Below, in pieces: positions 5,200-63,319 of a stretch of 64,000 nt of DNA. The notes under the pieces are model-generated. The model had not been told where the DNA came from, did no database searches, and saw only the letters and a list, made by a program, of their open reading frames with translations. The position numbers and the translations under genes are program-made. Each line of letters begins with the position of its first letter. The first letter of the stretch is position 1. Location: IMG/VR virus record IMGVR_UViG_3300028920_000022, positions 124,001-188,000 of that record, one strand, 5' to 3'.

Positions 5200-5213
5200 T
5201 AATATTTTTCCAT
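5200..5213 (+). promoter_or_regulatory. candidate phage-specific promoter TAAT-N7-CAT
   Basis: TAAT-atttttc-CAT, 6 nt before ATG; motif recurs at several loci. Confidence 0.55.
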
Positions 5214-5219
5214 TGAATT

Positions 5220-5576
5220 ATGAATTCAATGGAAAAAATACTGAAGCTGGCAGAATCTTTTGAGGCTGAGTTAACCAAAACCGCAAAAGGTAAAAAAGAA
5301 AAGAAAGATAAAGACCCCAAAGCAAAGACTAGAAATCGTGGAGACTGTGTATTTCCTGCAGGATCGTCCAAGGTAAAAGATGACAAAGATCATTTTCCTA
5401 TCAATAGCGAAGCTCAGGCACGCAATGCACTAGCTCGTGCCAATCAGTATAGTGCTTCGCCGCCTTGGTATTCTGGATCATTGCAGAGTCTTGTTAGTGC
5501 CGTTTCGCGCGCTGTCCACAAAAAGTACAAGGGCATTGAAGTCAGCAAGAAATCCAAGAAGCCCGGCAAAGGCTAA
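5220..5576 (+). CDS. basic hypothetical protein with KLA..F..KxA leader
   Basis: ILKLAESFEAELTKTA leader; HFPINSEAQARNALARA. Confidence 0.7.
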   Translation: MNSMEKILKLAESFEAELTKTAKGKKEKKDKDPKAKTRNRGDCVFPAGSSKVKDDKDHFPINSEAQARNALARANQYSASPPWYSGSLQSLVSAVSRAVHKKYKGIEVSKKSKKPGKG

Positions 5577-5587
5577 AATAAAAACTG

Positions 5588-5616
5588 TTGACACCCGAAG
5601 GCTTCCATGGTAGCGT
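5588..5616 (+). promoter_or_regulatory. sigma70-like promoter
   Basis: TTGACA-17-TAGCGT, TG extension. Confidence 0.6.
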
Positions 5617-5619
5617 GCG

Positions 5620-5916
5620 GTGGTGTGCTGTCCACTCTGCAAAAGAAAAGATTGCAATTTTAGCGATCATCATCTAGTTCCTCGCTCACGTGGAGGAACA
5701 CGCCAGGACACCGTTCCTATTTGTTTAGATTGCCACAACGGTGTACATGCGTTCTTTACCAACAAAGAATTAGAAAACGAATTCAACTCTGTCGAGGCGT
5801 TACTGGCTGACGAACGTTTTGCCAAACATCTAAGATGGCTGGCAAAACAAAACCCAACAAGACGTCATCGCTCCAAAAGAGTTCGAGACAAAAAGAAAAG
5901 AAACAGAAGTGGGTGA
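5620..5916 (+). CDS. HNH endonuclease-like protein
   Basis: CPLC...HHLVPRSRGG...CLDCHNGVH. Confidence 0.85.
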   Translation: MVCCPLCKRKDCNFSDHHLVPRSRGGTRQDTVPICLDCHNGVHAFFTNKELENEFNSVEALLADERFAKHLRWLAKQNPTRRHRSKRVRDKKKRNRSG

Positions 5917-6215
5917 GCTTTATTGGCGAAGAATTAGAAGAATATTATAATTCCCAGTACGATAAGTATTACAATTTTGACTACGACTTTAACTACGACT
6001 TATATAAAATAAATTTTGCACACAGCTGGCAACTATGTGAAAAAGAATCTAGAGAATCTTATGACCCGGTATTTGTTTGTAAGGTTTGCGGAATTTACGC
6101 TATTGGTAAACCTACAGATCGTTATTCTCCACATGTTTACGCTTATTATACGACGAATTACGACGAGTCGACAATGTCTTGTGCTGAGATTTGTGTAAAG
6201 GATATAATCGAATGA
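5913..6215 (+). CDS. zinc-finger microprotein with C-terminal IKDIIE-type tag
   Basis: HSW..CKVCG..MSCAEICVKDIIE; GTG start inferred from GTGA overlap. Confidence 0.7.
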   Translation: MSFIGEELEEYYNSQYDKYYNFDYDFNYDLYKINFAHSWQLCEKESRESYDPVFVCKVCGIYAIGKPTDRYSPHVYAYYTTNYDESTMSCAEICVKDIIE

Positions 6216-6424
6216 ACGTTTTATACGGTAGTCCACAAAATATGTCACGCATTACTTTAGACGAAATTCCTACAGATCCAATTATCGAACGAATCAAACG
6301 ACTTGCTTTATTGCGCCGAGAAGAACTACAAACTATATTACAATGTGCACCTGACCCTGAAAAATATAATCAAGAGCTATCTGTAATTAATAATATTCTT
6401 TCTGGTATAGAAGGGCTAGATTAG
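6212..6424 (+). CDS. hypothetical protein
   Basis: ATGA-coupled to previous gene. Confidence 0.6.
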   Translation: MNVLYGSPQNMSRITLDEIPTDPIIERIKRLALLRREELQTILQCAPDPEKYNQELSVINNILSGIEGLD

Positions 6425-6443
6425 CTCAGAAAACTCTTGCAAC

Positions 6444-6695: not shown

Positions 6696-8036
6696 ATGCT
6701 CACAGATGTTCCCGTTATCGATCAGAAATCTCTTGGACGTATCTTTCGCGTAGGTATTCGTGAAGGTAAAAATATTATGATTTTGGGTCCGTCTGGTGGC
6801 GGCAAAACATTTATTGCTGTGGATATCGCTCATTCAGAAGGATGTCGCCTAGTTTATATTAACTTGGCGGTATTGGAACGTACCGATTTCCAGGGGTTTC
6901 CTGTTATCTCTCAGGATAAAACACTGGTATCATACGCTACTCCTGACTTTTTGCCATTCGCCGACACCAACGAACGTGACGAAAAGAACGCTTTGGAAAA
7001 CCTCTCTACCATTCTCAATGACGCAAAAGATAAAAACATCATGGGAGAGATTGATAAGCGCTTGAATGCCGTGGAATATCGTCGTCAGGCTCGTATTATT
7101 GCGAATGCCATGCCGTACCTTTCGGAAGGCTCCCAAAAATCGCTGAAACCATACCTTAATAAGGTTCTAGCAAACCTCCCAGAAGGAAAACCAATTGTAT
7201 TCCTTTTCGATGAGGTCGATAAAGCCGCTAGCGAAACAATGCAAACTCTTCTGGAGTTCCTGCAGTTCAGAAGTATTAACGGACGCAAACTGGATATTAA
7301 GGCTTGTTTGCTGACTGGTAACTTGCCTGATGAACATGCTGCTTCTCAGCAGATTTCGCACGCCATTACGAAACGATGTAAGTCTTACAAGCTACAGTTG
7401 GACTTCAATCAGTGGCGTGAATGGGCTTATGGTCATGCCGTGCATGATTTGGTTGTTGGTTTCTTAACCGCTAACCCGGACTTTTTGCACAAGACCCCTC
7501 CAGACGGTGATCCTACTGCTTATGCTCTGCCGTCTCCTCGAACCTGGACTGACGTTAGTGATTCGTTGTGGGCTTTGGAAAAAGATAATCAATTCCAAAA
7601 GCTGAATGGCGAGGAGTTGGCTGGGTTGCAAAAACTTCTAATTGCTGGAAGCGTAGGAGACACTGCGGCAATTAAATTCGTTAACTGGTTCAAATACTAT
7701 CGTAAGATGGACCCGGTTGTGGAAGCTCTTTTGGAAAAGGGAAAGATGCCTGACCAAAAGAAACTGGACGCCCAGGAACTGTTTATCTGTGCTCTGTCGG
7801 CATGTTCCCGTGTATATAGAGAACTGAAGCCAAAGAACGAAGACAAAATTAAAAAGTATGCCAAGAATGTTTACAAGTGGATTGGTTCCCTTTCTGTAGA
7901 TATTCAAATGGGAGCTTCTCGTATGGCGTTCGGCGGAGACTTCGATAACATCCAAAAGTACCGTCTGTCGGAAATTGACGAGTTTTCCAACGTCTTCAAG
8001 CACATCAAGAAGACGATGCAAACTAATGATATCTGA
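6696..8036 (+). CDS. MoxR-like AAA+ ATPase
   Basis: Walker A GPSGGGKT, Walker B FLFDEVDKA, TGN sensor, PSPRTW. Confidence 0.9.
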   Translation: MLTDVPVIDQKSLGRIFRVGIREGKNIMILGPSGGGKTFIAVDIAHSEGCRLVYINLAVLERTDFQGFPVISQDKTLVSYATPDFLPFADTNERDEKNALENLSTILNDAKDKNIMGEIDKRLNAVEYRRQARIIANAMPYLSEGSQKSLKPYLNKVLANLPEGKPIVFLFDEVDKAASETMQTLLEFLQFRSINGRKLDIKACLLTGNLPDEHAASQQISHAITKRCKSYKLQLDFNQWREWAYGHAVHDLVVGFLTANPDFLHKTPPDGDPTAYALPSPRTWTDVSDSLWALEKDNQFQKLNGEELAGLQKLLIAGSVGDTAAIKFVNWFKYYRKMDPVVEALLEKGKMPDQKKLDAQELFICALSACSRVYRELKPKNEDKIKKYAKNVYKWIGSLSVDIQMGASRMAFGGDFDNIQKYRLSEIDEFSNVFKHIKKTMQTNDI

Positions 8037-8041
8037 GTGCC

Positions 8042-9547
8042 ATGGAAGTAATTAATAAAACAATCCTTGACCCAAAACAGTTGGGTGGGGATAAGTTCAA
8101 CGAATATAATCAAAAAATCTCGGTATCCAAAGTAGCTCTTGCAAAGAGCCCAGAAAAGGGAGGGATGCCGTTTATATTCGCCTTCACTAGCGTGAAAAAC
8201 CACACGTTAGATGAAGTGAAAATGCCGTACCTAAACAAAGACGGAGACGTAGAGTTCTCTTGTACGGCAGCAACTGATGGCAAAGAATATAAATGGAGCC
8301 CTCAGATTCTGGATATCCTGGGACCACGTGAGGTTGCAATCATCACAGCTCACGAAACCTATCATATTGTGTTACAACATTGTAATGCGCACCGTGCGTT
8401 TGGTAAACACAAAATGGCATGGGCGTTGGCGATTGACTATGTTGTCAATGGTATGATTGAACACGATTTGATTCAAAGTAATCAAATCTCTCAGTACGAT
8501 TGCGATAAAGCCAGAACAAACGGGAACCATCCTATTTGGAAGAATGGGATCGGTGGAACTAAAGGTCCGGTTTATTTCGATGAATTAATGAAGGATATCG
8601 AAAAAACCCTCAAACAACTAGCTGAAGATAAGAAAAAAGGTAAGAAATCTGTCGTTCCTACTGGAAATATTGCCGAAAAACAACCCAAACCGCAGGTTAT
8701 TCGTCCATATGCTGATTATAAGTTGTATGGTCGGTCGGCTGAGGATATTTATGATGAAATTATGAAAAAGATGGAGGAGGAAGCTAAGAAAAATGGTATG
8801 AAGCTTTCTGACCTTCTTAGTCCTGGGGATTTTCACCTGCCTGGTGGTTACGTAATTGGTGGCGGATCCATGATGGACGAACATAAAGAAAACGACATCA
8901 GCCGAACCAAACTTTTGGAAGAGGTTATGGATGCCGTTTCTGCTGCTCGTGCACTGTCTGCTGGTAATATGCCATCAGCTATTGAAGATCAGTTAAAAGC
9001 ATTACAAGAGCCAAAACTTAAGTGGCAGGATATCGTTCGCCATGCTCTGCAAACCACCCGCCAGGAAAAAGGTACGCTTAATGATTGGACGCGCATGCGG
9101 CGTCGGTTGGTTTCTTATGAAATCTTTGTGCCCAAAAAGAAGGATCAACGAGTTCGTTGGCTTTGTATGTTGGACACTTCTGGTTCTATGAGCGATGATG
9201 ATATCGTGTACGGAGTCTCACAGTTAAAAGTTTTGGACGGTAGATCTAAAGGTATTGTGGTTCCCTGTGATGCTCAGTGTTATTGGGACCATGCGGTGGA
9301 AATCCATGGCATGAGTGACCTGCCTAAGGTAAAGCCAGTAGGTAGAGGTGGCACCGTGTTTACTGATTTCTTTGAGAACTACGAAAAGAAGATCGCGGAA
9401 GAGATCGACCTAATTATTGTGATTACCGATGGATATTTGTACGATTTGGACATGAAAAAACCTGCAGTGGATTGTGTGTGGGTTATTACCAACGATAATG
9501 AGTTCAAAGCTCCGTTTGGTAGAACTGCACCCTTGCGTTCATATTGA
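8042..9547 (+). CDS. metallopeptidase-like/VWA domain protein (DUF2201-type), partner of AAA+
   Basis: TAATDG, HETYH (HExxH), MIDAS DTSGS, GRGGT, ITDG. Confidence 0.9.
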   Translation: MEVINKTILDPKQLGGDKFNEYNQKISVSKVALAKSPEKGGMPFIFAFTSVKNHTLDEVKMPYLNKDGDVEFSCTAATDGKEYKWSPQILDILGPREVAIITAHETYHIVLQHCNAHRAFGKHKMAWALAIDYVVNGMIEHDLIQSNQISQYDCDKARTNGNHPIWKNGIGGTKGPVYFDELMKDIEKTLKQLAEDKKKGKKSVVPTGNIAEKQPKPQVIRPYADYKLYGRSAEDIYDEIMKKMEEEAKKNGMKLSDLLSPGDFHLPGGYVIGGGSMMDEHKENDISRTKLLEEVMDAVSAARALSAGNMPSAIEDQLKALQEPKLKWQDIVRHALQTTRQEKGTLNDWTRMRRRLVSYEIFVPKKKDQRVRWLCMLDTSGSMSDDDIVYGVSQLKVLDGRSKGIVVPCDAQCYWDHAVEIHGMSDLPKVKPVGRGGTVFTDFFENYEKKIAEEIDLIIVITDGYLYDLDMKKPAVDCVWVITNDNEFKAPFGRTAPLRSY

Positions 9548-9750
9548 ACAAAAAACAACACGAAGTCCTAATAGGGGGACTTTTAGGAGACGCTTCCCTG
9601 GAATTGTCAGGGAAAATGCGTAATCCTCGTGTTCGTATTGAACGTTCTTACAAAGATATCAAATATTTACAGTGGCAGTATAATGTATTTAAAAGCATGT
9701 GCGGATCCGATGTACATGTTTACTGTAGGGCGCTGTCATGCTGTGTGTAA
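9544..9750 (+). pseudogene. truncated LAGLIDADG homing endonuclease remnant
   Basis: LIGGLLGDASL...YLQWQYNVFK, only 68 aa, 3' end overlapped by next gene. Confidence 0.65.
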
Positions 9751-9886
9751 AACGTGTGGTATACACGTTATTCAATTTCAAGAAGGTTGGCGAATATCAG
9801 CCTATAATAACTCACATAAAAGCTTGGTATTTAAGTGTCCTGATACTATATCTTGCAACGACTTTATTATCCGACAAATAATATGA
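9710..9886 (+). CDS. zinc-finger microprotein with C-terminal tag
   Basis: CKTCG..PDTISCNDFIIRQII. Confidence 0.65.
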   Translation: MYMFTVGRCHAVCKTCGIHVIQFQEGWRISAYNNSHKSLVFKCPDTISCNDFIIRQII

Positions 9887-10104
9887 AAACAAATAATATG
9901 AAAATAGGAACGCACGAGTTCACGCTTACTGGTTCTAACTATACCAAATGTAATTTATGTGGTATGGTGATTTTAGGTTTAAGTCATGGTTGGGTAATCT
10001 CATGCAGAAATAAGATCAGGGGTGATAGAAAATCTAAACCTATAAGCGGCTTCAAACCAGACTACATCTCCTGTAACGATTTTATAATCAAACAAATAAT
10101 CTAA
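9883..10104 (+). CDS. zinc-finger microprotein with C-terminal tag
   Basis: IGTHEF..CNLCG..PDYISCNDFIIKQII; paralog of previous gene. Confidence 0.7.
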   Translation: MKTNNMKIGTHEFTLTGSNYTKCNLCGMVILGLSHGWVISCRNKIRGDRKSKPISGFKPDYISCNDFIIKQII

Positions 10105-13863: not shown

Positions 13864-13891
13864 TTGACATATCTCAGCCTCATGTTATACT
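13864..13891 (+). promoter_or_regulatory. sigma70-like promoter, probably leaderless
   Basis: TTGACA-16-TATACT with TG; ATG 7 nt after -10. Confidence 0.7.
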
Positions 13892-13898
13892 CTCATCT

Positions 13899-14210
13899 AT
13901 GTGGACACAAACCGTATCTTTGATTGACCTTCCAGAAGTTGCAGAACTTGTGGAAAGATATGGTGTTTTCGATGGTCCCATGCCCCGCTTTGTACTGGTT
14001 GGCACTCTGGAATTAAAACCCGGTAAACACCTCACAGGTGTTCTGTGCTTTGTGGATAACGAGTTCCATGCCCACCTCTTGGCAAAGAAAATGGCTAAAC
14101 ATGGCTCAGTACAGATTGAACATACCGAAGCTCACCCTGATGGAGTTACATATTCCGTTGGTGCTGTAGAAAGTTTTGATAGAATGTTTGGACGCATTCT
14201 TCAAAAATAG
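13899..14210 (+). CDS. hypothetical protein
   Basis: 103-aa ORF directly after promoter. Confidence 0.7.
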   Translation: MWTQTVSLIDLPEVAELVERYGVFDGPMPRFVLVGTLELKPGKHLTGVLCFVDNEFHAHLLAKKMAKHGSVQIEHTEAHPDGVTYSVGAVESFDRMFGRILQK

Positions 14211-16402: not shown

Positions 16403-16424
16403 TGGCATAATTAGCCATCCAAGT

Positions 16425-16814
16425 ATGGATTATGCTAAAATAGAATTATTAGCTAAGAAATACGCTAAACTAGCGTTGGGTGTAGAAGAACCGACAGCAG
16501 TAGAGCTTCCACATAGGCAGCACCCCCTAGAACGCCCCCCAGAACGTACTATGCTATCCGTTACCCCAGAAGACTCTCAGCGTATACGAGAACAGGAAAT
16601 GCCAGACTTCGAATATATTCCTGGCTATGATAATTTTTCAGACGCAATAGATCACTTAAGAACAGCTACCGGCTACATCGAAGCTATTAAACCAAGTTCT
16701 TATGTAACATATTCGGCACGAGCGCTTATCTCTGATGCCGCACTTCGTATATTAAATGGCATGAAAGAAGTATATAAAGCTACACCTTCAGATAGATTGA
16801 AGGCTAGCCCATAG
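16425..16814 (+). CDS. hypothetical protein with KLA/KxA leader
   Basis: IELLAKKYAKLA leader; GCAT-N7-CAT-N6-ATG upstream. Confidence 0.65.
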   Translation: MDYAKIELLAKKYAKLALGVEEPTAVELPHRQHPLERPPERTMLSVTPEDSQRIREQEMPDFEYIPGYDNFSDAIDHLRTATGYIEAIKPSSYVTYSARALISDAALRILNGMKEVYKATPSDRLKASP

Positions 16815-17283
16815 CTTGTTTCAATAAATAAACGGACGTTTCAGCTTCATTACATTGAGCCATGATTAAATCGTCCAACCCTAAAGTTATATCGTTGCTT
16901 TCTTTCAAAGCCTCGTAAGTTTCTTTCGCAACCGATAAAAAAGCTTCTTCGATTGCTAGAGAGTTGGTTAAATGATCTTCCGAAGAATATTTGCCCACTA
17001 ACTTCTTTAATGTAGCCATCTGGTCGTTTGGATTAATGGCATCGTTTCCAAAGACTCCAATGGTTTTTTCTACGGCGGCATCTAGTCTGTCCCCAGCAGC
17101 CTCATAAATTCTTTGAAACAAAAGGTGATTCCCATAAAATTGCGGAGATTTACACAACCAGTGGCTAAACTGATGAATCGCATACACAGCTTGAATATAA
17201 GCAATATAATTATTCATTAATTTGCCAGCGCTTTTTCTGCTAGCTTCTTTTTTGATTTCTGAATACTGGTCTAATGTCGTCAT
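16804..17283 (-). CDS. Dps/ferritin-like protein
   Basis: HQFSHWLCKSPQFYGNHLLFQRIYE...LDAAVEK matches Dps ferroxidase signature. Confidence 0.8.
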   Translation of the reverse strand: MTTLDQYSEIKKEASRKSAGKLMNNYIAYIQAVYAIHQFSHWLCKSPQFYGNHLLFQRIYEAAGDRLDAAVEKTIGVFGNDAINPNDQMATLKKLVGKYSSEDHLTNSLAIEEAFLSVAKETYEALKESNDITLGLDDLIMAQCNEAETSVYLLKQAMG

Positions 17284-17315
17284 GGAGTAATCCTCTACTC
17301 CATGCGAAATAATTA
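17281..17315 (-). promoter_or_regulatory. TAAT-N7-CAT motif plus perfect 9-bp hairpin covering SD/start of Dps-like gene
   Basis: Minus strand TAAT-tatttcg-CATGGAGTA-gaggat-TACTCCATG. Confidence 0.6.
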
Positions 17316-17319: not shown

Positions 17320-17493
17320 CTATCGATAGCCAAGATTCGTAGTATTTTGGTTGTTTGGTTGCTCAATTTGAAACTTTGAATTGGGAGATATTAAAATTGT
17401 TGGAGAGACATATTCTTCATCCAAATCGCTAAGCGGTATTAGAACACGGTCATCTTGCTTTTTGATATCCAATTTTTTCATACCTACCTCCAT
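17320..17493 (-). CDS. small hypothetical protein
   Basis: MEVGMKKLDIKK...; GGAGG SD before second Met. Confidence 0.5.
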   Translation of the reverse strand: MEVGMKKLDIKKQDDRVLIPLSDLDEEYVSPTILISPNSKFQIEQPNNQNTTNLGYR

Positions 17494-17565
17494 AACATTT
17501 ATGCCGCAAATTACCATCGCAGACGTGACTTTATTCCTGTAGCAACTGCTACTACACGACATTAC

Positions 17566-25922: not shown

Positions 25923-25948
25923 CATGGTGAAATTATTGCATATATTGT

Positions 25949-26110
25949 ATGAGCGAATGGGAAGTAACTCGTCATTATATTTCCGATGTTATGTTACCAA
26001 TGCCGAAGGTGGTAATGTGGACACGAAATATTAATTTTATGATAAGCTGGTTAGAATCGTATGTCGAGGCAGTAGATTTAGGTGTAGTTAATCCAGACTT
26101 TAGACCATAA
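25949..26110 (+). CDS. small hypothetical protein (53 aa, not in ORF track)
   Basis: Hand-translated MSEWEVTRHY...NPDFRP fills gap. Confidence 0.4.
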   Translation: MSEWEVTRHYISDVMLPMPKVVMWTRNINFMISWLESYVEAVDLGVVNPDFRP

Positions 26111-35865: not shown

Positions 35866-35928
35866 GTGGGATAATTTTGAAATCGAGCCGGCTGAGAAAA
35901 ACAACTATCAATATTTTCACAGCATGGC

Positions 35929-36282
35929 ATGATTATGCGAAAAAAGTTGAACGAATTCAAAAAAATATTCCTTGCTAGGCGTGCTCAATTATTGGAACAA
36001 CTGAATAGAGATACTTTCTTGGACACCGAAGGTGATGATGTTGATTTAATCCAAGGAAAGATATTACATTCAGTAACGGAGAAGCTTTCAGCCAGAGAAC
36101 TTGCGGCTCTTCGTAGAATAGATTTGGCTCTGGAAAAAATCGAGTCAGGGGAATTCGGAACTTGTGAAGAATGTGGTGAGGAAATCCCAGAGAAACGTTT
36201 GATGGCTCATCCGGAAGCTAGCACCTGTATTTCTTGTGCTGAACATCTGGAAAAAATTGAAAAGCAATATGCAAGTGGTTGA
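35929..36282 (+). CDS. DksA/TraR family C4 zinc-finger protein
   Basis: Coiled coil with GDDVD tip; IDLALEKIESGEFGTCEECGEEIPEKRL..PEASTCISC. Confidence 0.9.
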   Translation: MIMRKKLNEFKKIFLARRAQLLEQLNRDTFLDTEGDDVDLIQGKILHSVTEKLSARELAALRRIDLALEKIESGEFGTCEECGEEIPEKRLMAHPEASTCISCAEHLEKIEKQYASG

Positions 36283-36352
36283 TATTACAAAAGAAAATCA
36301 CATTCTTTTAAGTCAAACACAGCATAAATAACCATAGAACAGCAAGGTAACT

Positions 36353-37009
36353 ATGAAAAAAATGAGCTTTGTCCATCCCATGATTTATGAAAAGACACGG
36401 GATGGGGAAATGTTATATGATGTTTATTCGCGCCTAATAAAGGAACGCATAGTTTTTCTAGCAGATGAGGTGGATGTGGAGGTAGCAACAACGGTAGCTG
36501 CTACCTTTTTGTTTCTGGACAGCCAGAGCAAAACGAAACCAATCTCCCTGTATATTAATTCCCCTGGCGGTTCTGTACATGATGGGCTGTTTACCATTTA
36601 CGATGCCATAAATTATATAGAGTGTCCTGTTAAAACTGTGTGCTTAGGTGAGGCTGCTTCCGCGGCTGCAACAATATTGGCTGCCGGTTCACCCGGAATG
36701 AGGTTTGCTACTCCTAATAGTTTAATCATGATTCACCAGTTGCAGATTTCAGATTTGTCTGGTAAAGGAACAGATGTAGCAAAGGAAGCAGAACGGATTA
36801 AAGAATGGAACGAGAGATTGTTTCAAACATTAGCCCGCCATACTGGGCATACTACTGAGGAAATTGCTCAAGTATGTAGAGATGATACGTATTTTAACGC
36901 AAAACAAGCTAAGGAATTCGGTTTGATTGATGAAATTGTTGAACCGAAGAAAAAGATTCCCGATTTAATTACCCAAACCCCAAAAGCAAGACGGAAAAAG
37001 GGTTCGTGA
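36353..37009 (+). CDS. clpP: ATP-dependent Clp protease proteolytic subunit
   Basis: YDVYSRLIKERIVFL, YINSPGGSV, AASAA (catalytic Ser), IMIHQ, RDDTYF..EFGLIDEI. Confidence 0.95.
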   Translation: MKKMSFVHPMIYEKTRDGEMLYDVYSRLIKERIVFLADEVDVEVATTVAATFLFLDSQSKTKPISLYINSPGGSVHDGLFTIYDAINYIECPVKTVCLGEAASAAATILAAGSPGMRFATPNSLIMIHQLQISDLSGKGTDVAKEAERIKEWNERLFQTLARHTGHTTEEIAQVCRDDTYFNAKQAKEFGLIDEIVEPKKKIPDLITQTPKARRKKGS

Positions 37010-37459: not shown

Positions 37460-37835
37460 GCTACTTCGAGATTTGGATATTCCTAAGAATCGTGTGCGTT
37501 GCGATTTGTGTGGAAAAGAATACTCTAAAGAGATTATTTGTGGGTATTCTATGGGTAACGTTAGGGATTATAGGTTTCGTTATAGCTTCGATTCTACGCA
37601 CCTGCCGTTAATTTACACATGGACCAGCAGACATTGGCTGGTTCGTGATCCCAAATCAGTTAAACATATTTTTAGAAGACGCCGAATGTGTACAGATCTT
37701 ACAACCGTTGATGGGTTCTATCCATACCACAAAATAGCTGTAGAATTAAAGTGTGAGTGTGGTGGTTATAGGACGTATTTTATCAAATTAAAGCACATTT
37801 CTTCATCAACAATACGACGCAGAAGGGCACTCTAA
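37446..37835 (+). CDS. Cys-rich hypothetical protein
   Basis: CDLC...CECG; similar layout to previous gene. Confidence 0.6.
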   Translation: MKKNRLLRDLDIPKNRVRCDLCGKEYSKEIICGYSMGNVRDYRFRYSFDSTHLPLIYTWTSRHWLVRDPKSVKHIFRRRRMCTDLTTVDGFYPYHKIAVELKCECGGYRTYFIKLKHISSSTIRRRRAL

Positions 37836-37846
37836 TATTCTTGCAT
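37833..37846 (+). promoter_or_regulatory. candidate phage-specific promoter TAAT-N7-CAT
   Basis: TAAT-attcttg-CAT, 7 nt before ATG. Confidence 0.55.
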
Positions 37847-37853
37847 ACCAATT

Positions 37854-39341
37854 ATGGAAATTATTGCAAGGAAACGTTCCGAGGATCCAGCCCAGGAAAA
37901 GCTAAGGGAGCGCAAATCCCAATGGAACGCAGAGGTTAAAACCTTAATTGCACAACTTATTGCTTTTAAACGTGGATTAAATGGCAGAGGGGATCCTAGG
38001 GCAGGATTACCCCCGAGTAATATTAAAAACCCCTTTCCTAGTGAAATAGGTCAATACCTGGAAGAGATGGCAACGCGATATCAGAAAGTAATTACTGAAG
38101 CTAAACAAATTATATCTGAACAGTCTGATTATAGTCAAAAACGTCGCAAAGGAAAGAAAGAGATGCCTTTTCCGGTTGCGGCAAGCGTTGAGAATGAAAT
38201 AGAAAAACAGGCGTCTTGGTGGGGAAGTAGAGCCTGGACATGGTTCACTCAGTATCCTATACTGGGTGGAAAAGATGCAGACAGGGATCGGATAGCCTTG
38301 TTACATACTGCTACGGCTTTGATTGATTATATTGATGAAACCGAGGAAGATTTATCTAAAGGCGGTGATGACGCAATACCTTCTGCTGTATATAAATTAT
38401 TAGCAATGCATCGTGTATTTGATATGCGGTTTATTAAGATATTTAACCGCATGATGGTTCGTCATACTCAGGTAGCTGAAGAAAAAGCCCCTACTGAAGC
38501 ACCAGTTTCGCCTGAAGCAGAACCGGAAAGCTATTTTTCTCCACCAGTACCGGATGAACCTAAGGAAGCACTGAGGATATTGGAAGATTTGTTGCTGATT
38601 GATATACATCACGTTAAGAAACTGTTAGATATTGTGAAGCAGTTGAAAAAAGTGTCGCCGGAAGAATACAAGGGTTTGTATCGAGACTATGAATTGATCG
38701 TGAAACTAGGAGGAGAAACTAGAGCACGATTGCGAGTAGCTCAAAGAAGCCCGGATGATACAGAAGAGCTGGCTTCGGCAATGTCTCTTTATAAAGATGT
38801 ATTAATTCGGTACAATAAAGTGTTAAATATATTTAAACGGGCATTGGGAGTTAATGGAAATAGATTCAGAACTTTGTTGGAGCAAGCAGAAGAAACTTAT
38901 AAGAGGGAAATTTCTGCTATGTACGGTCCTGAAATAGAAAAATTAGCCCAGAAATCTCTTAAACGGTGGTGGCGCAGAACTCGGTTGGGTCTTTTCCCGC
39001 GCGAAGAAGACAGAATGAAACGAGATGTTTTGTTGAAGACCCAGGAATTAACTCGTTTATTGAATCATATGCAGGATTTGTTAGAAGAAAAGTATACAAC
39101 AGCTGCCCAAGTGTGGCAACATGTTGCTGATTCGTCCGAATTATTAGCTGAAGTATTTGGGATGATATTAAATCTTTCTGAATACCATAATGCAATGGAA
39201 GCTGATAAGAAATTAAAGAAGACCAAACAACCATCCACAAAAATTGATCGAGATAACCGCATTAAATTAACAAAGTGCCAGAAATATTATAAAGATTTGA
39301 GTAATTTCTTGCAACGAACCATGGGTTCCGCTGAGCAATAA
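37854..39341 (+). CDS. large helical hypothetical protein (candidate virion protein)
   Basis: Repeated EIEKQA / EIEKLA sites; motif upstream. Confidence 0.7.
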   Translation: MEIIARKRSEDPAQEKLRERKSQWNAEVKTLIAQLIAFKRGLNGRGDPRAGLPPSNIKNPFPSEIGQYLEEMATRYQKVITEAKQIISEQSDYSQKRRKGKKEMPFPVAASVENEIEKQASWWGSRAWTWFTQYPILGGKDADRDRIALLHTATALIDYIDETEEDLSKGGDDAIPSAVYKLLAMHRVFDMRFIKIFNRMMVRHTQVAEEKAPTEAPVSPEAEPESYFSPPVPDEPKEALRILEDLLLIDIHHVKKLLDIVKQLKKVSPEEYKGLYRDYELIVKLGGETRARLRVAQRSPDDTEELASAMSLYKDVLIRYNKVLNIFKRALGVNGNRFRTLLEQAEETYKREISAMYGPEIEKLAQKSLKRWWRRTRLGLFPREEDRMKRDVLLKTQELTRLLNHMQDLLEEKYTTAAQVWQHVADSSELLAEVFGMILNLSEYHNAMEADKKLKKTKQPSTKIDRDNRIKLTKCQKYYKDLSNFLQRTMGSAEQ

Positions 39342-41293: not shown

Positions 41294-42811
41294 ATGCAAG
41301 AAACGTCCACGATAGTTGAACAAATAAATGAAATTGCGCAAATTTTACAAGAGGAAGATTTAGATGAGTGGGTAGTACCACAACTGTTAGAGTTTTATTC
41401 TAGTAGAATAAACAGCTTAGCAATAAAAGCCTACGGACCTTCTGCTATTAATAGTGAAGGTCCCTCTCTTGCTCAGCTAGCCTTTAAAGAGCGTGCAAAA
41501 TCTGAGTTGCGTTCTGCTGTTTATACTTTTATTTTCAAATCTGAGCATTGGCGCAATGGTAGAGATATTAATACATATCTTTTAACTTGTTTAAATCGTT
41601 TGGCTGATAGAATTCGGTGGGATACTGATAGTATTAGAAAAACAAACACTCCCGTATGTCCAGCCGCCAAATATCTTCAAAGAAAAGAATTTTTAGTTCA
41701 AGAAGGAAGGTTGTTGCGGTCACAATTTTGTGTGGAAGAGTTGGAAAGAGCTACAGATGAAATAAAAAATCTGCGTAACAAAGAGGAGAAGACAGAACTA
41801 GATCATCAAATGTTATTAAAACTTGAGCTGCGTTCGCGTTTGTTTCGGGCATTTTCTTTACATTCTCGCAAAGGATATCGTTGTCCTGATTGTTTTAGAT
41901 TTATTCCTGAATCATGGAATGGTCCTAATGGTATTTCTTGTCCGTATGATGATTGTATGTTTGGTGGTGACATAAACAGCCTTGAGAGAATGGCACACCC
42001 CGTTGGGCTTACTCAGAGAACTGATCTTAGCCTGCAAACACCAATGTCCGATTCAGAAAGAGACAGCAAACAGATACAGGATACGTTTGTGGCAGAAGTA
42101 ATCGATGCGGATACGCGAATGGAAGTAAATGAAAACTTCAATGAAGAGTTTCGAGTATTAACTGACGTTATTGATGAGCAGGTAAATTCTATTAAACGAA
42201 CAAACTCTGCCGGAACATTGGTACAGAAGCTTCGTATGTACGAAGCATACAAAAATATGTTAAATAAATATCCAGAAGATATGGTGTCGTATTTGGTGCA
42301 CCGCAAGCAGAGTGCAGATTTTCCTATACAGTCTAGGATTTTTCAGGAATATGTTGGTTTAATGCAGGATACGTTGCCTTTTGAAATAAAGCGCGGGGAA
42401 GATACCTATGACGTATTATCTCTAACGGATCCTAATATTTCTTTATTCTTGGGCGTTTCTGAGTTTAATGCTACTGTTCGAAGCGATTTGACTATACCTA
42501 ACTGTACCACAGAAAGCTACATTGGAGGAAGAAAATTTAAAGATTATGGACCATGTTTTATTGGGATGATTATTGATGTTATTGATCGTAATGCTGGAGA
42601 ATCAATCAAGGACAAGATTAAAGAATATAGTTTTGTGCAGATCAAAATGCATGAAACTGTTGTGCCTGGAACACCAGTAAAAGTTACACATTATCGTATC
42701 CCGTCTCATTATGAGATGGGGAATCTCGTGTATCTTCAACGTGTGAGAAAAAAGATAGTAGACAAGGTTTACTATTTGATGCATGGCGAAAAGCGCGTGC
42801 CGGGAAATTAA
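41294..42811 (+). CDS. putative divergent RNA polymerase sigma-like protein with zinc-finger insert
   Basis: AVYTF..WRNGRDINTYLLTCLNRLA resembles sigma regions 2.3-2.4; LSLQTPMSDSERDSKQIQDTF resembles region 3.2; CPDC..CPYDDC. Confidence 0.45.
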   Translation: MQETSTIVEQINEIAQILQEEDLDEWVVPQLLEFYSSRINSLAIKAYGPSAINSEGPSLAQLAFKERAKSELRSAVYTFIFKSEHWRNGRDINTYLLTCLNRLADRIRWDTDSIRKTNTPVCPAAKYLQRKEFLVQEGRLLRSQFCVEELERATDEIKNLRNKEEKTELDHQMLLKLELRSRLFRAFSLHSRKGYRCPDCFRFIPESWNGPNGISCPYDDCMFGGDINSLERMAHPVGLTQRTDLSLQTPMSDSERDSKQIQDTFVAEVIDADTRMEVNENFNEEFRVLTDVIDEQVNSIKRTNSAGTLVQKLRMYEAYKNMLNKYPEDMVSYLVHRKQSADFPIQSRIFQEYVGLMQDTLPFEIKRGEDTYDVLSLTDPNISLFLGVSEFNATVRSDLTIPNCTTESYIGGRKFKDYGPCFIGMIIDVIDRNAGESIKDKIKEYSFVQIKMHETVVPGTPVKVTHYRIPSHYEMGNLVYLQRVRKKIVDKVYYLMHGEKRVPGN

Positions 42812-48604: not shown

Positions 48605-48608
48605 TATT

Positions 48609-48914: not shown

Positions 48915-49342
48915 TACCCAGATCCTGGTGGCGTCCAGTAGGGGTTTCTAATTTTCTTGGGCTTGGCAGGTCCAGGCTTTTTGTTTTTCCCGCTGCCCCC
49001 ACAGAGCTGGCATATTTTATTTGTATCTTTCCAACCAAGGAATCTGCCCGTTCCTTTACAGGCAAGGCATAATCCTTTTTCTTCCAATTCTTCCTGTAGT
49101 TTTTTAGCTTTAATTCCCCGCTCTTTCATTTCTGCTTTTTCTTCAGGGGTCCATTCAATATCCTCTTCTTCACCAATCGTCCCCTCTCCTTCACAGGTGG
49201 GGCAGACGGTTTCTACAGTGTAGTGTCCCCTGGCATCAGAATATTTGTCCTCAGATTCATAACCTAAACCGCCACAATCTGGACAATCTTCAATTGCAGC
49301 GAGTTTTCGGGCGAAGTATTTTGCAAGCTTGGTTATATGCAT
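48911..49342 (-). CDS. DnaJ-type zinc-finger protein with KLA/KxA leader
   Basis: MHITKLAKYFARKLA; four CxxCxGxG repeats; start reassigned by CAAT-N7-CAT-N6-ATG motif. Confidence 0.75.
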   Translation of the reverse strand: MHITKLAKYFARKLAAIEDCPDCGGLGYESEDKYSDARGHYTVETVCPTCEGEGTIGEEEDIEWTPEEKAEMKERGIKAKKLQEELEEKGLCLACKGTGRFLGWKDTNKICQLCGGSGKNKKPGPAKPKKIRNPYWTPPGSGY

Positions 49343-49348
49343 ACTTGA

Positions 49349-49362
49349 ATGTTGATTTATTG
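49349..49362 (-). promoter_or_regulatory. candidate phage-specific promoter CAAT-N7-CAT
   Basis: Minus strand CAAT-aaatcaa-CAT-tcaagt-ATG; overlaps a divergent TTGACA at 49360. Confidence 0.5.
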
Positions 49363-60786: not shown

Positions 60787-60788
60787 GT

Positions 60789-60884
60789 ATGACTGATAAG
60801 AACGCAAATATCGTTATCCTGTTGGGTATTGGTTTTATAGCCGGGTTTATGGCAAGCGAATTGGTTAATTATTTCCTATATTAA
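60789..60884 (+). CDS. 31-aa single-TM peptide (not in ORF track)
   Basis: MTDKNANIVILLGIGFIAGFMASELVNYFLY; SD GGAG. Confidence 0.45.
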   Translation: MTDKNANIVILLGIGFIAGFMASELVNYFLY

Positions 60885-60895
60885 TTATCCCACAT
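60882..60895 (+). promoter_or_regulatory. candidate phage-specific promoter TAAT-N7-CAT
   Basis: TAAT-tatccca-CAT, 6 nt before ATG. Confidence 0.55.
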
Positions 60896-60901
60896 ACAAA
60901 T

Positions 60902-61864
60902 ATGTGGAAAAATTTGCTCAAAGATGCTGATTTATTTGAGAAATTTGCTAAAGCTCAGCCGATCTACATGTATCACGGAACGGCTGAGGATGTTTTGCCG
61001 AGCATTTTGAGCCAGGGACTGATTACTAATCCTAAACAGAGGGCTTGGGCAGAAGATCCTGATGCAAGTTTTTGGATGCCGTCACGCCAATCTTTACATA
61101 GTATATATTTAACCAGCAATTTATTAACGGCATTAGGTTCTGGAGGTCGCCGCCGGAACGAAAAACTAGCTAGAATTCTTCTTATAGTATCAGTACAGCC
61201 GCAATCGTTGGACGCTGATGAGGATTCGTTTATCGGCTTACGGGCAGCAACTCCGACCCACTGGTCGGAGTTTTTGGTTGCGATGGCGTATATTGAGGAA
61301 ATGTCTGGGAAATCAGACGGTACCGTGAACGACGCTGCCATGAAAAAAGATTACGTTGATACTAATCTTGAACGAATAAAGGACAAACTCAAACAGCCAT
61401 TACATCCCGCATTAGCAACGAGACTCAAGGTTCTTTTGGAAAAGTGTTATCTTCCAGCTTTGGCTCGTAAAGCAGCATATGTAGATGCTGGAAGTTGGGA
61501 ACGTGCACAATATCACTTGGAAGTTCAAAATGTAGAACAGCCCAACAAAAACAAAGCAGAACAAGAATTCAAACGTTGTCAGGACCAAGTCACTAGAACA
61601 TTACATATTTTGGCGCGTCCTGATGAGGTTAATGATTTGTTTGACTTTACTGCCAGATCAAATACACCAATTGGATTTTCTGGATCAAACAAGATCGTTG
61701 CTATCTTCAAAGAAGTTCCTAGACCAGATAGCGATTTTAGAAAATGGCTACAGCTTGTCTACCCCGATTCTGTTGATCAGATTCCAGAGGAAGCTCTCAA
61801 TAAACTTATGCAGGACTGGAATCAAACCGTAGGTCCTGGGTTACAAATATTACCGCGTAATTAA
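60902..61864 (+). CDS. ADP-ribosyltransferase-fold protein with KxA leader
   Basis: LLKDADLFEKFAKA leader; MYHGT..LPSILSQGL, IYLTS, DED. Confidence 0.6.
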   Translation: MWKNLLKDADLFEKFAKAQPIYMYHGTAEDVLPSILSQGLITNPKQRAWAEDPDASFWMPSRQSLHSIYLTSNLLTALGSGGRRRNEKLARILLIVSVQPQSLDADEDSFIGLRAATPTHWSEFLVAMAYIEEMSGKSDGTVNDAAMKKDYVDTNLERIKDKLKQPLHPALATRLKVLLEKCYLPALARKAAYVDAGSWERAQYHLEVQNVEQPNKNKAEQEFKRCQDQVTRTLHILARPDEVNDLFDFTARSNTPIGFSGSNKIVAIFKEVPRPDSDFRKWLQLVYPDSVDQIPEEALNKLMQDWNQTVGPGLQILPRN

Positions 61865-62668
61865 TAATTCTTTTTTATTTCTTACAGTATTAATTGTATA
61901 TTTAAGCTCTATTTCTTTTATTGTTGCCCAGCTATATAATTTTCGTATTTCAGGGCAATCATCATAAGATAAAACCCAAGGATGTTTGGTTTGGCGTAAC
62001 GATTTCGCCAAGCGCTCGTGATCTTGTGTGGTGAACCCATGCTGGTACATTTCATTACCTTTAATAAAATAAGGAGGATCTAAATACATAAAAGCTTGAC
62101 AATCATTATTTTTAATTAGCTCTTCAAAGTCCAAACTCCAACACTTGTACCCACGCACGTGTGTGTTTGATAATAGTGGGTAAATGTTATCTATATTTTT
62201 AAACAGCGTTTTAGGGGACCAGCGACAATCTATTTTGTATTGTGACTTTTGGTTTACACCACCTAAGGGTCCACCAGATTTCGTGCCCAAACCAGAATAA
62301 GATATTTGATGTATGGCGAGTTTTTTGAATCCTACATCGGTAATATCGAAAATATTAGGAATAGACGTTAATTCCTTTTTAAATTCCCAAAAATGAGATG
62401 TGTTGGGAACAAATGAACTGATTTTTTCTTTTAAACCTTCTGAGTCTATTAGGATAGCCGTCCAGAGGGCAGCCATTCCCTTATCGATATCATTTATCCA
62501 CAGTTTTTTGATGTTAATATTTGATAATAGTTTAAAACCAATCGAGCCCCCTCCAAAGAAAGGTTCTCTATATTCTGCGTTGGTATTTTTTTCAAATATA
62601 GAGGTGAGTGCTGCGAGTATTGGTTTACTAATTTTGGCTTTTCCGCCTGGATATCGCAATAACATCAT
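61850..62668 (-). CDS. Dam-like (D12 class) DNA adenine methyltransferase
   Basis: LRYPGGK, EPFFGGGS, INDID, YLDPPY, LSYDD, ELLI. Confidence 0.93.
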   Translation of the reverse strand: MMLLRYPGGKAKISKPILAALTSIFEKNTNAEYREPFFGGGSIGFKLLSNINIKKLWINDIDKGMAALWTAILIDSEGLKEKISSFVPNTSHFWEFKKELTSIPNIFDITDVGFKKLAIHQISYSGLGTKSGGPLGGVNQKSQYKIDCRWSPKTLFKNIDNIYPLLSNTHVRGYKCWSLDFEELIKNNDCQAFMYLDPPYFIKGNEMYQHGFTTQDHERLAKSLRQTKHPWVLSYDDCPEIRKLYSWATIKEIELKYTINTVRNKKELLITR

Positions 62669-62714
62669 CGGGATGTATGGGAAAAACCAGCAGTCTCGAC
62701 GCTATTCAGGCTGG

Positions 62715-62728
62715 TAATAGAGAAACAT
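62715..62728 (+). promoter_or_regulatory. candidate phage-specific promoter TAAT-N7-CAT
   Basis: TAAT-agagaaa-CAT, 6 nt before ATG. Confidence 0.55.
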
Positions 62729-62734
62729 AAGAGT

Positions 62735-63319
62735 ATGGTCAAGTTTAAAGTATCCGAATCGGCAAATTGTCAGGTGTGTAGCGAGGAATTCCATGATTTC
62801 CAGCTAAAAACCACCAAAGTAGGTTCTAAAGTACTGGACATTTGTCCAGGATGTCTTGAATCCTTTTCTAATTATGTAGATGCGGCTAAAATTTTAAACA
62901 AGATTGCTCAACCAGCAGATGTTCAACTGGAGTCTCCTAATGTGGTTGTAGAGCCTATGCAACCGGTCATTCAGCGTGCTACAGAAGTTTTGAAGAGAAT
63001 GGATCCTAATTATTTTATTGGTGTTAGGAAAATCAAGGCGGGCGTTTCTCCTTATTTTGGGCATGTAGAATCTGGTCCAGACAAAGACCCAGCTGTTATT
63101 AATATTAATCTAGGTATGGTTTCCCAGAAGGCACGAGAATATAATGCTAATCCCGTTATAGCTTCTGCTATTGTTATTGCTCACGAAAAGGGACATGTGG
63201 GTAGTTATGAACAGCAACAGGGGTTTGTAGGTGGAGAATCTCCTGCCGAACAAGAAGAGCAAAGAGTGGCTGCTTGGATTGAAAAGAACAAAGATCGTTT
63301 GCAAGATTTGATGCAATAA
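62735..63319 (+). CDS. zinc-ribbon + HExxH zincin-like protein
   Basis: CQVC..CPGC; ILNKIA site; AHEKGH..GGESPAE. Confidence 0.65.
   Translation: MVKFKVSESANCQVCSEEFHDFQLKTTKVGSKVLDICPGCLESFSNYVDAAKILNKIAQPADVQLESPNVVVEPMQPVIQRATEVLKRMDPNYFIGVRKIKAGVSPYFGHVESGPDKDPAVININLGMVSQKAREYNANPVIASAIVIAHEKGHVGSYEQQQGFVGGESPAEQEEQRVAAWIEKNKDRLQDLMQ

What the first reader, a model, noticed from the sequence alone, without database searches (positions are those of the whole stretch)
5200..62737. Second promoter class: AAT-N7-CAT-N6/7-ATG upstream of SD-less genes
Seen at fixed spacing before starts lacking an SD: TAAT-atttttc-CAT-6-ATG (5220), TAAT-attcttg-CAT-7-ATG (37854), CAAT-aaatcaa-CAT-6-ATG (49342 minus), TAAT-tatccca-CAT-6-ATG (60902), TAAT-agagaaa-CAT-6-ATG (62735). 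TAAT-tatttcg-CAT also precedes the Dps-like gene (17315 minus). Variants: GCAT-N7-CAT-6-ATG (16425), GCAT-N7-CAT (36322, clpP), TAAT-N6-CAT-7-ATG (17493 minus). None has a TTGACA -35 on the same strand, and the downstream genes are largely those with KxA leaders. Inference: a phage-specific, probably late, promoter producing leaderless mRNAs, read by a phage-encoded sigma.
Basis: partly seen in the sequence, partly recalled or inferred. Interest (0 to 1): 0.8.

Follow-up and report, generated by a model that had tools for sequence, protein, structure and literature searches.

The report
Conserved promoter-like box before start codons
A short AT-rich DNA box without a -35 element sits 6-7 bases before the start codons of several genes of an uncultivated 459-kb sediment phage and is conserved in distant relatives, so it is most likely a second promoter class making mRNAs with little or no leader; start sites and timing remain unmeasured.

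Summary
All named sites exist, and the motif is more than AT-rich chance. Its strongest support is conservation.

- The syntenic relative (35-86% protein identity) keeps the box before 16425, 17283(-), 36353, 37854 and 62735.
- All 30 distinct upstream regions of 37854 homologs (27-100% identity) carry YAT-N6/7-start, and 26 carry AT-N7-YAT.
A second mode has 10-23 nt containing a Shine-Dalgarno sequence.
- No site has a good -35.
- A matrix trained only on other phages recovers 5220, 37854 and 60902. It also finds a new site before an unlisted 53-aa ORF (25949).

The promoter reading is well supported. "Leaderless" is plausible but unproven. In its favour, the spacing equals that of this phage's TTGACA/TAnnnT promoters to ATG, and the base before ATG is a pyrimidine in 23/26 cases. 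The rival is that the hexamer is a -10 element with initiation at YAT.

"Late" has no support. The 37854 product is an all-helical protein, not a capsid protein, and the neighbourhood is nucleic-acid metabolism. ORF 41294 resembles sigma factors only weakly. No RNA data were listed.

The parts
5201..5222 (+). Class-2 box AATATT-tttc-CAT, 6 nt, ATG 5220 (118-aa ORF, no SD). It lies inside a 10-bp inverted repeat, CCATTGAATT-ATG-AATTCAATGG.
   Evidence: Recovered by the external matrix (score 10.4). The relative has no ortholog.
16406..16427 (+). Class-2 box CATAAT-tagc-CAT, 6 nt, ATG 16425 (129 aa).
   Evidence: The relative keeps GGCATAATTgaCCAT with 7 nt to ATG.
17281..17314 (-). Class-2 box AATTAT-ttcg-CAT, then an 18-nt leader with SD GAGGA, ATG 17283 (Dps-like, 159 aa).
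   Evidence: top matrix hit, 14.4. The relative keeps AGTAATTATaTtGCAT with 16 nt to ATG, in a divergent intergenic region.
17491..17516 (-). Weaker variant TAAT-N6-CAT-7-ATG (17493). An alternative start has GGAGG 12 nt further on.
   Evidence: No ortholog in the relative, so it is unverified.
25929..25951 (+). New class-2 site GAAATT-attg-CAT, 7 nt, ATG 25949, opening an unlisted 53-aa ORF (25949-26110).
   Evidence: Found by the matrix trained on other phages. The relative has tggtGAATTTattgCAT-7-ATG before a 50-aa gene.
35910..35931 (+). Variant AATATT-ttca-CAG, 6 nt, ATG 35929 (DksA/TraR-type zinc finger).
   Evidence: The relative has AATATTttcaCAT followed by an SD-like leader. AATATTTTCACA is conserved.
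36323..36355 (+). Class-2 box CATAAA-taac-CAT, then a 17-nt leader with SD AAGG, ATG 36353 (ClpP-like protease).
   Evidence: ACAGCATAAATAAnCAT is kept in three close relatives. L024 has TAATATATTCCCAT followed by a GAGG leader.
37834..37856 (+). Class-2 box AATATT-cttg-CAT, 7 nt, ATG 37854 (495-aa all-helical protein). The TAA of TAAT is the stop codon of the preceding ORF.
   Evidence: The element is kept before homologs down to 27% identity.
49340..49361 (-). Class-2 box AATAAA-tcaa-CAT, 6 nt, ATG 49342 (zinc-finger protein). It lies back to back with the TTGACA promoter at 49360.
   Evidence: No ortholog in the relative. TTAACA lies 18 nt upstream of the hexamer.
60883..60904 (+). Class-2 box AATTAT-ccca-CAT, 6 nt, ATG 60902 (320 aa). 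It lies inside the 7-bp inverted repeat CCACATA-CAAA-TATGTGG.
   Evidence: The relative has TAAT-ct-CATATA-tg-TATATG instead, so the inverted repeat is kept but the spacing is not.
62716..62737 (+). Class-2 box AATAGA-gaaa-CAT, 6 nt, ATG 62735 (194 aa), in a 66-nt divergent intergenic region.
   Evidence: GGCTrGTAATAGAnAAACATA is conserved with the same spacing. No sigma70-type promoter fits the region.
41294..42811 (+).
   Evidence: More than 200 homologs at 45-79% identity. The best structural matches are sigma factors (Z 5.3-7.0). No Pfam hit.
13864..13901 (+). Comparator class-1 promoter TTGACA-16-TATACT, 7 nt, ATG 13899. Others of this kind lie at 15607, 39743 and 40153; 49360 (9 nt to ATG) and 17566 (11 nt) are further from the start.
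   Evidence: The hexamer-to-ATG spacing is 6-7 nt, as for YAT-to-ATG in class 2.

Best explanation
The box is the core of a second promoter class without a -35, used by this clade of huge phages. Its conserved form is nATAWT, 4 nt (often tTnG), then YAT: 13 bp with invariant AT dinucleotides one helical turn apart.

At about half of the sites the ATG follows YAT by 6-7 nt, with no Shine-Dalgarno sequence. Transcription would then begin at the A of the ATG, 7-8 nt past the T of YAT, giving a leaderless mRNA. That is the same geometry as this phage's sigma70-type promoters.

At the other sites a 10-23-nt stretch holding a Shine-Dalgarno sequence lies between the box and the ATG. The first hexamer base is A rather than T, there is no -35, and no A is conserved at -11 of the downstream register. 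For these reasons recognition is probably by a specificity factor other than the host housekeeping sigma, possibly phage-encoded.

Shown: existence, position and conservation of the box, and the lack of a -35. Inferred: promoter function, start site, and the identity of the factor.
For: Conservation between genomes:
- The box is conserved in otherwise diverged intergenic DNA of a syntenic relative at 16425, 17283(-), 36353, 37854, 62735 and 25949.
- Before 37854 homologs from 30 distinct sequences, YAT-N6/7-start occurs in 30/30 and AT-N7-YAT in 26/30. Spacings are N6 16, N7 9, N8 1.

Independent recovery:
- A matrix trained on other phages, combined with the rule ATG at N6/7, gives 4 window hits before ORFs of 50 aa or more. 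First-order Markov simulations of the window give 0.115 (max 2 of 200).

Promoter rather than RNA element:
- 62735 (both genomes) and the relative's Dps-like gene lie in divergent intergenic regions. The box is the only conserved candidate there.

Leaderless geometry:
- Class-1 TAnnnT hexamers lie 6-7 nt from ATG at 13899, 15644, 39779 and 40188, and in the relative at 4815, 30658 and 31067. This equals the YAT-to-ATG spacing.
- The base at -1 is a pyrimidine in 23/26 family members and T at all 7 window short-spacing sites, against 43/140 other genes (Fisher P=4e-8).
- Published jumbo-phage promoters have an AT-rich element, 6 nt, then the start site (AR9 early AAATATATATTAT-6N-G; PMC5312081).

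No -35:
-.
Against: - No transcript data exist: no RNA run was listed.
- The hexamer nATAWT is itself a good -10 (A and T invariant at positions 2-3, T at position 6), with YA 5-6 nt downstream. That would place the start at YAT.
- The register required for a start at ATG (TnGYAT) has no conserved A at -11.
- In L024 a GAGG with ideal SD spacing would lie upstream of a start placed 7-8 nt after CAT.
- The 17283 leader hairpin begins right after CAT.
- The motif carries little information. Many equal-scoring matches lie antisense in coding DNA.
- The 19 kb of flanking genome hold no further site.
- At 60902 the spacing is not conserved.
Confidence: 0.5

Rival explanations
1. Same promoter element, different register. 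nATAWT is a -10 hexamer of a -10-only promoter, read by host holoenzyme or a phage sigma. Transcription starts at the A of YAT or the purine after it. The mRNAs then carry a 6-9-nt SD-less leader, or a 15-25-nt leader with SD, and are not leaderless.
For: - The hexamers are AATATT, AATAAT, CATAAT and TATATT, with A and T invariant at positions 2-3 and T at position 6.
- Y-A lies 5-6 nt downstream, and T followed by A or G at 7-8 nt in 22/28.
- SD-containing variants give ordinary leaders in this register. L024 has CAT-tGAGGtacac-ATG. The relative's clpP has three AGGT repeats.
- The 6-bp stem GGAGTA/TACTCC starts immediately after CAT at 17283.
- 49342(-) has TTAACA 18 nt upstream of the hexamer.
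Against: - It does not explain why YAT-to-ATG is held at 6-7 nt in 30/30 homologs.
- It does not explain why the base before ATG is a pyrimidine as at the class-1 leaderless starts.
- A 6-9-nt leader without SD is a poor translation substrate in well-studied bacteria (general knowledge).
- Three fully conserved bases are unusually strict for an initiator.
Confidence: 0.3
2. The box is not a promoter. It could be an RNA-level translation signal for SD-less genes, such as an A/U-rich ribosome or S1 landing site, perhaps linked to the phage's own S21 and IF3. Or it could be a DNA operator for a regulator that binds two AT half-sites 10 bp apart.
For: - The position relative to the start codon is fixed, and the composition is A/U-rich.
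- The phage encodes an S21 homolog (56474-56827), and IF3 lies just outside the window.
- Inverted repeats span the start codons of 5220 and 60902, and the one at 60902 survives in the relative although the spacing changes.
- The AT dinucleotides are exactly 10 bp apart.
Against: - In the divergent regions (62735; the relative's Dps-like gene) some promoter must lie within 45-180 nt, and the box is the only conserved block resembling one.
- The box is also conserved 10-23 nt from ATG with a normal SD in between, where a ribosome-landing role is unnecessary.
- Extension of the CAT/ATG inverted repeat is no more frequent than chance, by hand inspection of 11 sites.
Confidence: 0.15
3. Chance pattern in AT-rich upstream DNA, picked out after the fact.
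For: - The strict motif is only 5 versus 1.5 on the + strand (P=0.04).
- The core is not enriched, and two of seven strict matches are spurious.
- The flanking 19 kb have no site.
Against: - Conservation at orthologous positions in diverged relatives.
- 30/30 in the 37854 family.
- Recovery by an externally trained matrix.
Confidence: 0.03

Closest known systems
Promoters of leaderless mRNAs (a -10 hexamer TAnnnT ending 6-7 nt before the start codon, as in actinobacteria, Deinococcus and many phages)
   Same: The conserved T of YAT lies 6-7 nt before ATG. There is no SD, the base at -1 is a pyrimidine, and the start is ATG in 29/30. The geometry is the same as this phage's own TTGACA-N17-TAnnnT-N6/7-ATG units.
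   Different: No -35. No conserved A at -11 in that register. An additional conserved AT-rich hexamer lies at about -19 to -14.
T4-type late promoters (TATAAATA at -10, no -35, read by gp55 with gp33 and the clamp; from general knowledge)
   Same: Only one AT-rich region and no -35. The clpP site reads CATAAATA. Use of a phage-specific factor is plausible.
   Different: The consensus is different and longer (nATAWT-N4-YAT). No gp55 or gp33 homolog was identified. The timing is unknown.
Early promoters of phiKZ-like jumbo phages (AR9: AAATATATATTAT-6N-G+1; PMC5312081)
   Same: A 13-nt AT-rich element ending in TAT, then 6 nt, then a purine start site, with no -35.
   Different: Those are read by a virion multisubunit RNA polymerase and give 26-491-nt leaders. 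No such polymerase genes were seen in the window. The middle 4 nt here are not AT-constrained.
-10-only and extended -10 promoters of bacterial sigma70 holoenzyme
   Same: The nATAWT hexamer resembles TATAAT, with Y-R at a suitable distance.
   Different: No TGn motif upstream (only occasional). The first base is A, not T. The YAT is strictly conserved.

Membership tests
Housekeeping sigma70-type promoter | -35 hexamer TTGACA-like, 16-18 bp upstream of the -10 | tested here: not met
   Best matches are 1-4 of 6 for either register, as at random positions. The only exception is 49342(-) with TTAACA. Class-1 sites in the same window do have TTGACA.
Housekeeping sigma70-type promoter | -10 hexamer with T-12, A-11 and T-7 | tested here: inconclusive
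   The upstream hexamer has the A and T but mostly A at the first base. The downstream register TnGYAT has T-12 and T-7 but no A-11.
Leaderless-mRNA promoter | Promoter element ending 6-7 nt before the start codon, no SD | tested here: met
   N6/N7 at 5220, 16425, 25949, 37854, 49342, 60902 and 62735, and in 30/30 homologs of 37854.
Leaderless-mRNA promoter | Primary 5' end at the A of the start codon | not testable with these tools
   No RNA run was listed for this sequence.
T4 gp55-type late promoter | TATAAATA at -10 and late timing | tested here: not met
   Only 36353 (CATAAATA) approaches it. The consensus is nATAWT-N4-YAT. Timing is unknown.
phiKZ/AR9 virion-RNAP early promoter | Long AT-rich consensus, 6 nt, then the start site; phage multisubunit RNAP present | tested here: inconclusive
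   The architecture is similar. No beta/beta'-like ORF is in the window. The rest of the 459-kb genome was not searched.
Sigma70 family (for ORF 41294) | Regions 2 and 4 recognisable by sequence | tested here: not met
   No Pfam hit even at E<=10. The profile against PDB gives only SigW region 2 at E=0.55.
Sigma70 family (for ORF 41294) | Sigma-like fold | tested here: inconclusive
   The top VIA-align matches are sigma chains of RNAP complexes at Z 7.0, 6.7, 6.4 and 5.3. Foldseek probability is 0.1-0.2. Language-model neighbours include Sigma70_r2 clusters at 0.92. All are below the tools' own reliability marks.
HK97-type major capsid protein (for ORF 37854) | HK97 fold | tested here: not met
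   The AF2 model has pLDDT 82.6 and consists of 13 long helices with no strands. No PDB match has E<0.1.

The most novel reading that the evidence does not exclude
A clade-specific expression programme of huge sediment phages. A very divergent zinc-ribbon sigma-like protein (the 41294 family, a core gene with more than 200 homologs) would direct core RNA polymerase to 13-bp promoters without a -35, placed exactly 6-7 nt from ATG. The resulting leaderless mRNAs would be favoured by the phage's own ribosomal protein S21 and IF3.
Probability: 0.2. Interest if true: 0.75.

Novelty: new variant of a known kind. Interest (0 to 1): 0.55.

Why it matters
Nothing is known about how uncultivated huge phages organise transcription. 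A conserved, easily scanned promoter element would allow three things from sequence alone:
- defining their transcription units;
- finding small unannotated genes (one was found here);
- proposing a partner specificity factor.

If the mRNAs are truly leaderless, the element also links to these phages' puzzling translation genes (S21, IF3). If the motif is only a -10-type box read by the host enzyme, it is an ordinary weak-promoter class, useful mainly for annotation.

Tried and rejected
- RNA evidence: none was listed for the region or for one gene.
- The INPHARED phage collection gave no protein or DNA match.
- No tRNA or Rfam family lies in the window.
- I first assumed 37854 was the major capsid protein because it follows a ClpP-like protease. 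The model is all-helical with no fold match, so this was dropped.
- Extending the same genome through ENA returned gene tables but no DNA. IMG/VR gave 19 kb more, with no further site.
- The relative has no ortholog of 5220.
- The position matrix alone is too weak. Most top hits are antisense in coding DNA, so it works only together with the ATG spacing.
- An RNA hairpin or palindrome reading (CAT...ATG) was considered. Extension beyond 3 bp is about as frequent as chance, although 5220 and 60902 have long inverted repeats.
- Bacillus sporulation-sigma -10 boxes (CATA...), ECF -10 (CGT), sigma54 and T7-type promoters were considered from memory and do not fit the spacing to ATG.
- Literature searches found no description of this motif.

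Full report
**Source and context.** The window is positions 124,001-188,000 of IMGVR_UViG_3300028920_000022, a 458,729-bp viral contig from a marine sediment metagenome. It is 39% G+C, and nearly all genes are on the + strand. It has no relative in the INPHARED phage collection and no tRNA or Rfam match.

Recognisable genes are nucleic-acid and protein metabolism:
- MoxR-like AAA and DUF2201/VWA pairs, RNA ligase, radical SAM, topoisomerase;
- RNase HII, methyltransferases, a ClpP-like protease, a DksA/TraR zinc finger, HU, Dps-like;
- a ribosomal protein S21 homolog;
- just outside the window: rIIB, DNA ligase, Thg1, IF3, peptide deformylase and primase.

No virion gene was recognised.

**The observation.**
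- The strict pattern AAT-N7-CAT-N6/7-ATG occurs 5 times on + and 2 times on -. First-order Markov simulations give about 1.5 per strand (P=0.04 on +).
- With TAAT it is 4 against 0.34 (P=0.004).
- Two strict matches are spurious (6507 and 60914-).
- The core alone is not enriched. Its placement is. Relative to 110 called starts, the relaxed 14-mer [TGC][AC]AT-N7-CAT ends 6-7 nt upstream 5 times and 17-21 nt upstream 4 times, and once elsewhere in the 100 nt upstream.
- The longer spacings contain a Shine-Dalgarno sequence (17283: GAGGA; 36353: AAGG).

**Comparative test within a syntenic relative.** I assembled 59 kb of a syntenic relative (ena:ERZ27256847:k141_1874129, positions 70,025-129,146) from overlapping fetches. 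It covers window positions 10.6-63.3 kb, with protein identities of 35-86%.

In intergenic DNA that is otherwise diverged, the box is kept at:
- 62735: GGCTrGTAATAGAnAAACATA, N6 in both genomes;
- 17283(-): AGTAATTATnTnGCAT, 18 versus 16 nt to ATG;
- 16425: GGCATAATTnnCCAT, N6 versus N7;
- 36353: ACAGCATAAATAAnCAT;
- 37854: TAATATTnnnGCATACCA, N7 versus N6.

At 60902 the relative keeps an inverted repeat ending in the ATG but not the TAAT-N7 spacing. 5220 and 49342 have no ortholog.

**Comparative test across a gene family.** Homologs of the 37854 protein (27-100% identity) were fetched from IMG/VR and JGI metagenomes. In 30 distinct upstream sequences:
- YAT lies 6 or 7 nt before the start codon in all 30;
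- AT-N7-YAT is present in 26;
- spacings are N6 16, N7 9, N8 1.

Aligned on YAT, the element is a hexamer nATAWT (AATATT, AATAAT, CATAAT, TATATT, AATATC and similar), then 4 nt (commonly tTnG), then CAT or TAT.

**Independent recovery.** I built a position matrix only from these other phages.
- On its own it is too weak. Many equal scores fall antisense in coding DNA.
- Combined with ATG at N6/7 it returns five window hits. Four precede ORFs of 50 aa or more: 5220, 37854, 60902 and a new one at 25929. Shuffles give 0.115 such hits (max 2 of 200).
- The new site opens an unlisted 53-aa ORF (25949-26110). It has a conserved counterpart in the relative (tggtGAATTTattgCAT-7-ATG before a 50-aa gene).
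- The 19 kb of the same genome flanking the window contain no further site.

**Promoter or something else.**
- 62735 lies in a 66-70-nt divergent intergenic region in both genomes. The relative's Dps-like gene lies in a 178-nt divergent region.
- A promoter must therefore lie in those regions, and the box is the only conserved block that resembles one.
- No site has a credible -35 in either register.
- The same window contains ordinary TTGACA-N16-18-TAnnnT promoters, also conserved in the relative.

I therefore read the box as a distinct promoter class without a -35. This is an inference. No transcript data could be found.

**Where transcription starts.** Two registers fit.

- The class-1 hexamers end 6-7 nt before ATG at 13899, 15644, 39779 and 40188, and at three sites in the relative. 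This phage therefore very probably makes leaderless mRNAs from sigma70-type promoters, and the T of YAT occupies the same position as their last T.
- The base before ATG is a pyrimidine in 23/26 family members and T at all seven short-spacing window sites. In 140 other genes it is a pyrimidine 31% of the time and A 54% (P=4e-8). That is the usual Y(-1)R(+1) start-site signature, and the class-1 leaderless starts share it.
- The layout "13-nt AT-rich element ending in TAT, 6 nt, purine start" is that of AR9 and phiKZ early promoters (PMC5312081).

*(B) Start at YAT.*
- nATAWT is a good -10 hexamer, with invariant A and T at positions 2-3 and T at position 6. Y-A lies 5-6 nt downstream, or T followed by a purine at 7-8 nt.
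- The register needed for (A), TnGYAT, lacks a conserved A at -11.
- SD-containing variants give ordinary leaders only in register (B). An example is L024, CAT-tGAGGtacac-ATG.
- The 17283 leader hairpin starts right after CAT.

Model (A) explains more of the conserved features: the fixed spacing, the -1 pyrimidine and the absence of SD. I put (A) at about 0.5 and (B) at about 0.3. About 0.15 goes to a non-promoter role (translation signal or operator), and about 0.03 to chance.

**"Late" and the specificity factor.** The proposal that these are late or virion genes is unsupported.
- The 37854 product is all-helical (AF2 pLDDT 82.6) and matches no solved fold.
- The other genes are a ClpP-like protease, Dps-like and DksA-like proteins, a zinc-finger protein and unknowns.
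- Four products (5220, 16425, 49342, 60902) share Lys/Ala-rich N-terminal helices. I did not pursue this.

- It has no Pfam match even at E<=10.
- Its AF2 model (pLDDT 84.4) aligns best to group-1 sigma chains in RNAP complexes, at Z 7.0, 6.7, 6.4 and 5.3.
- Foldseek probability is 0.1-0.2. A profile hit to SigW region 2 has E=0.55. Language-model neighbours include viral Sigma70_r2 clusters.

Each of these is below the tools' stated reliability marks. Together they make a consistent lead, not an identification.

**Verdict.** The promoter interpretation is well supported by conservation. Leaderless output and a phage factor are plausible but untested. "Late" is unsupported. This is a new variant of known kinds of phage promoter (no -35, leaderless type) in an unstudied clade of huge phages.

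Noticed in passing
window 13864-13901, 15607-15646, 39743-39781, 40153-40190 (also 49360, 17566, 35224, 5588): Sigma70-type TTGACA-N16-18-TAnnnT promoters. At the first four the hexamer ends 6-7 nt before ATG, implying leaderless mRNAs from ordinary promoters. At 49360 and 17566 the ATG lies 9 and 11 nt away, 35224 has a long SD-containing leader, and 5588 precedes a GTG at 5620. The ORFs listed from TTG 39743 and 40143 really start at ATG 39779 and 40188; those TTG codons are the -35 boxes.
   Followed up: partly
window 25949-26110; 60789-60884; 5051-5194: Three small ORFs missed by length filters. One is 53 aa and sits behind a class-2 box, conserved in the relative. One is a 31-aa hydrophobic peptide whose stop codon is the TAA of the 60902 box. 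One is a 47-aa Arg/Gly-rich protein (MPGRDGTGPRGKGP...).
   Followed up: partly
window 41294-42811: A 505-aa zinc-ribbon protein that is a core gene of the clade (more than 200 homologs at 45-79% identity). Its best structural neighbours are sigma factors at modest Z, and it has no sequence family.
   Followed up: partly
window 37854-39341: A 495-aa all-helical protein family with a highly conserved N-terminus (ARKRSxDPxQE...IAFKRGLNGRG). It always follows a ClpP-like gene, matches no solved fold, and has unknown function.
   Followed up: partly
window 5210-5232; 60889-60906; 17284-17301(-): Inverted repeats around start regions. CCATTGAATT-ATG-AATTCAATGG has 10-bp arms with the ATG of 5220 in the centre. 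CCACATA-CAAA-TATGTGG lies at 60902. GGAGTA-GAGGAT-TACTCC presents the SD of the Dps-like gene in a loop and is not kept in the relative.
   Followed up: partly
window 41208-41293 and 62669-62734: A conserved box (C/T)GTCGAGA(G/C) occurs in two intergenic regions, on opposite strands. Upstream of 41294 there is also a hairpin (GCTTAGG...CCTAAGC) whose structure, but not sequence, is kept in the relative.
   Followed up: no
window 19135-19303: A 169-nt intergenic region packed with overlapping palindromes (CGCGGAAATACTT/AAGGACTTCCGCG, TACGTAATATA/TATATTAAGTA, ACAACAGT/ACTGTTGT). The relative has direct repeats (GTAGTTATACA x2) at the same place. It may be an origin or a regulatory region.
   Followed up: partly
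window 56474-56827 and beyond the 3' end: A ribosomal protein S21 homolog lies in the window. IF3, peptide deformylase and thioredoxin genes lie 5-7 kb past the window end in the same genome, and in the relative.
   Followed up: no
window 6696-9547, 22780-24084 with 28285-29622, 55113-56474: MoxR-like AAA ATPase genes at 6696-8036, 22780-24084 and 55113-56474, and two DUF2201 (metallopeptidase plus VWA) genes at 8042-9547 and 28285-29622. These modules are repeated in one phage region.
   Followed up: no
window 9629-10104 and 47974-48914; many ORF ends: Paralogous small zinc-ribbon ORFs (GTHxF...C-x-KCGM). Many unrelated ORFs share a recurring C-terminal ...(K/Q)DII(E/T)-stop ending (for example before 18718, 28285 and 32143).
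   Followed up: no
relative L003:18669-20948 versus window 49398-50576; L007:8790-10031; L053:9118-9996; L006:21733-22236: The relative's RlaP-like gene carries an insertion of about 355 aa compared with the window. The relative also has HNH and LAGLIDADG endonuclease genes that are absent from the window. These look like mobile insertions that differ between close genomes.
   Followed up: no
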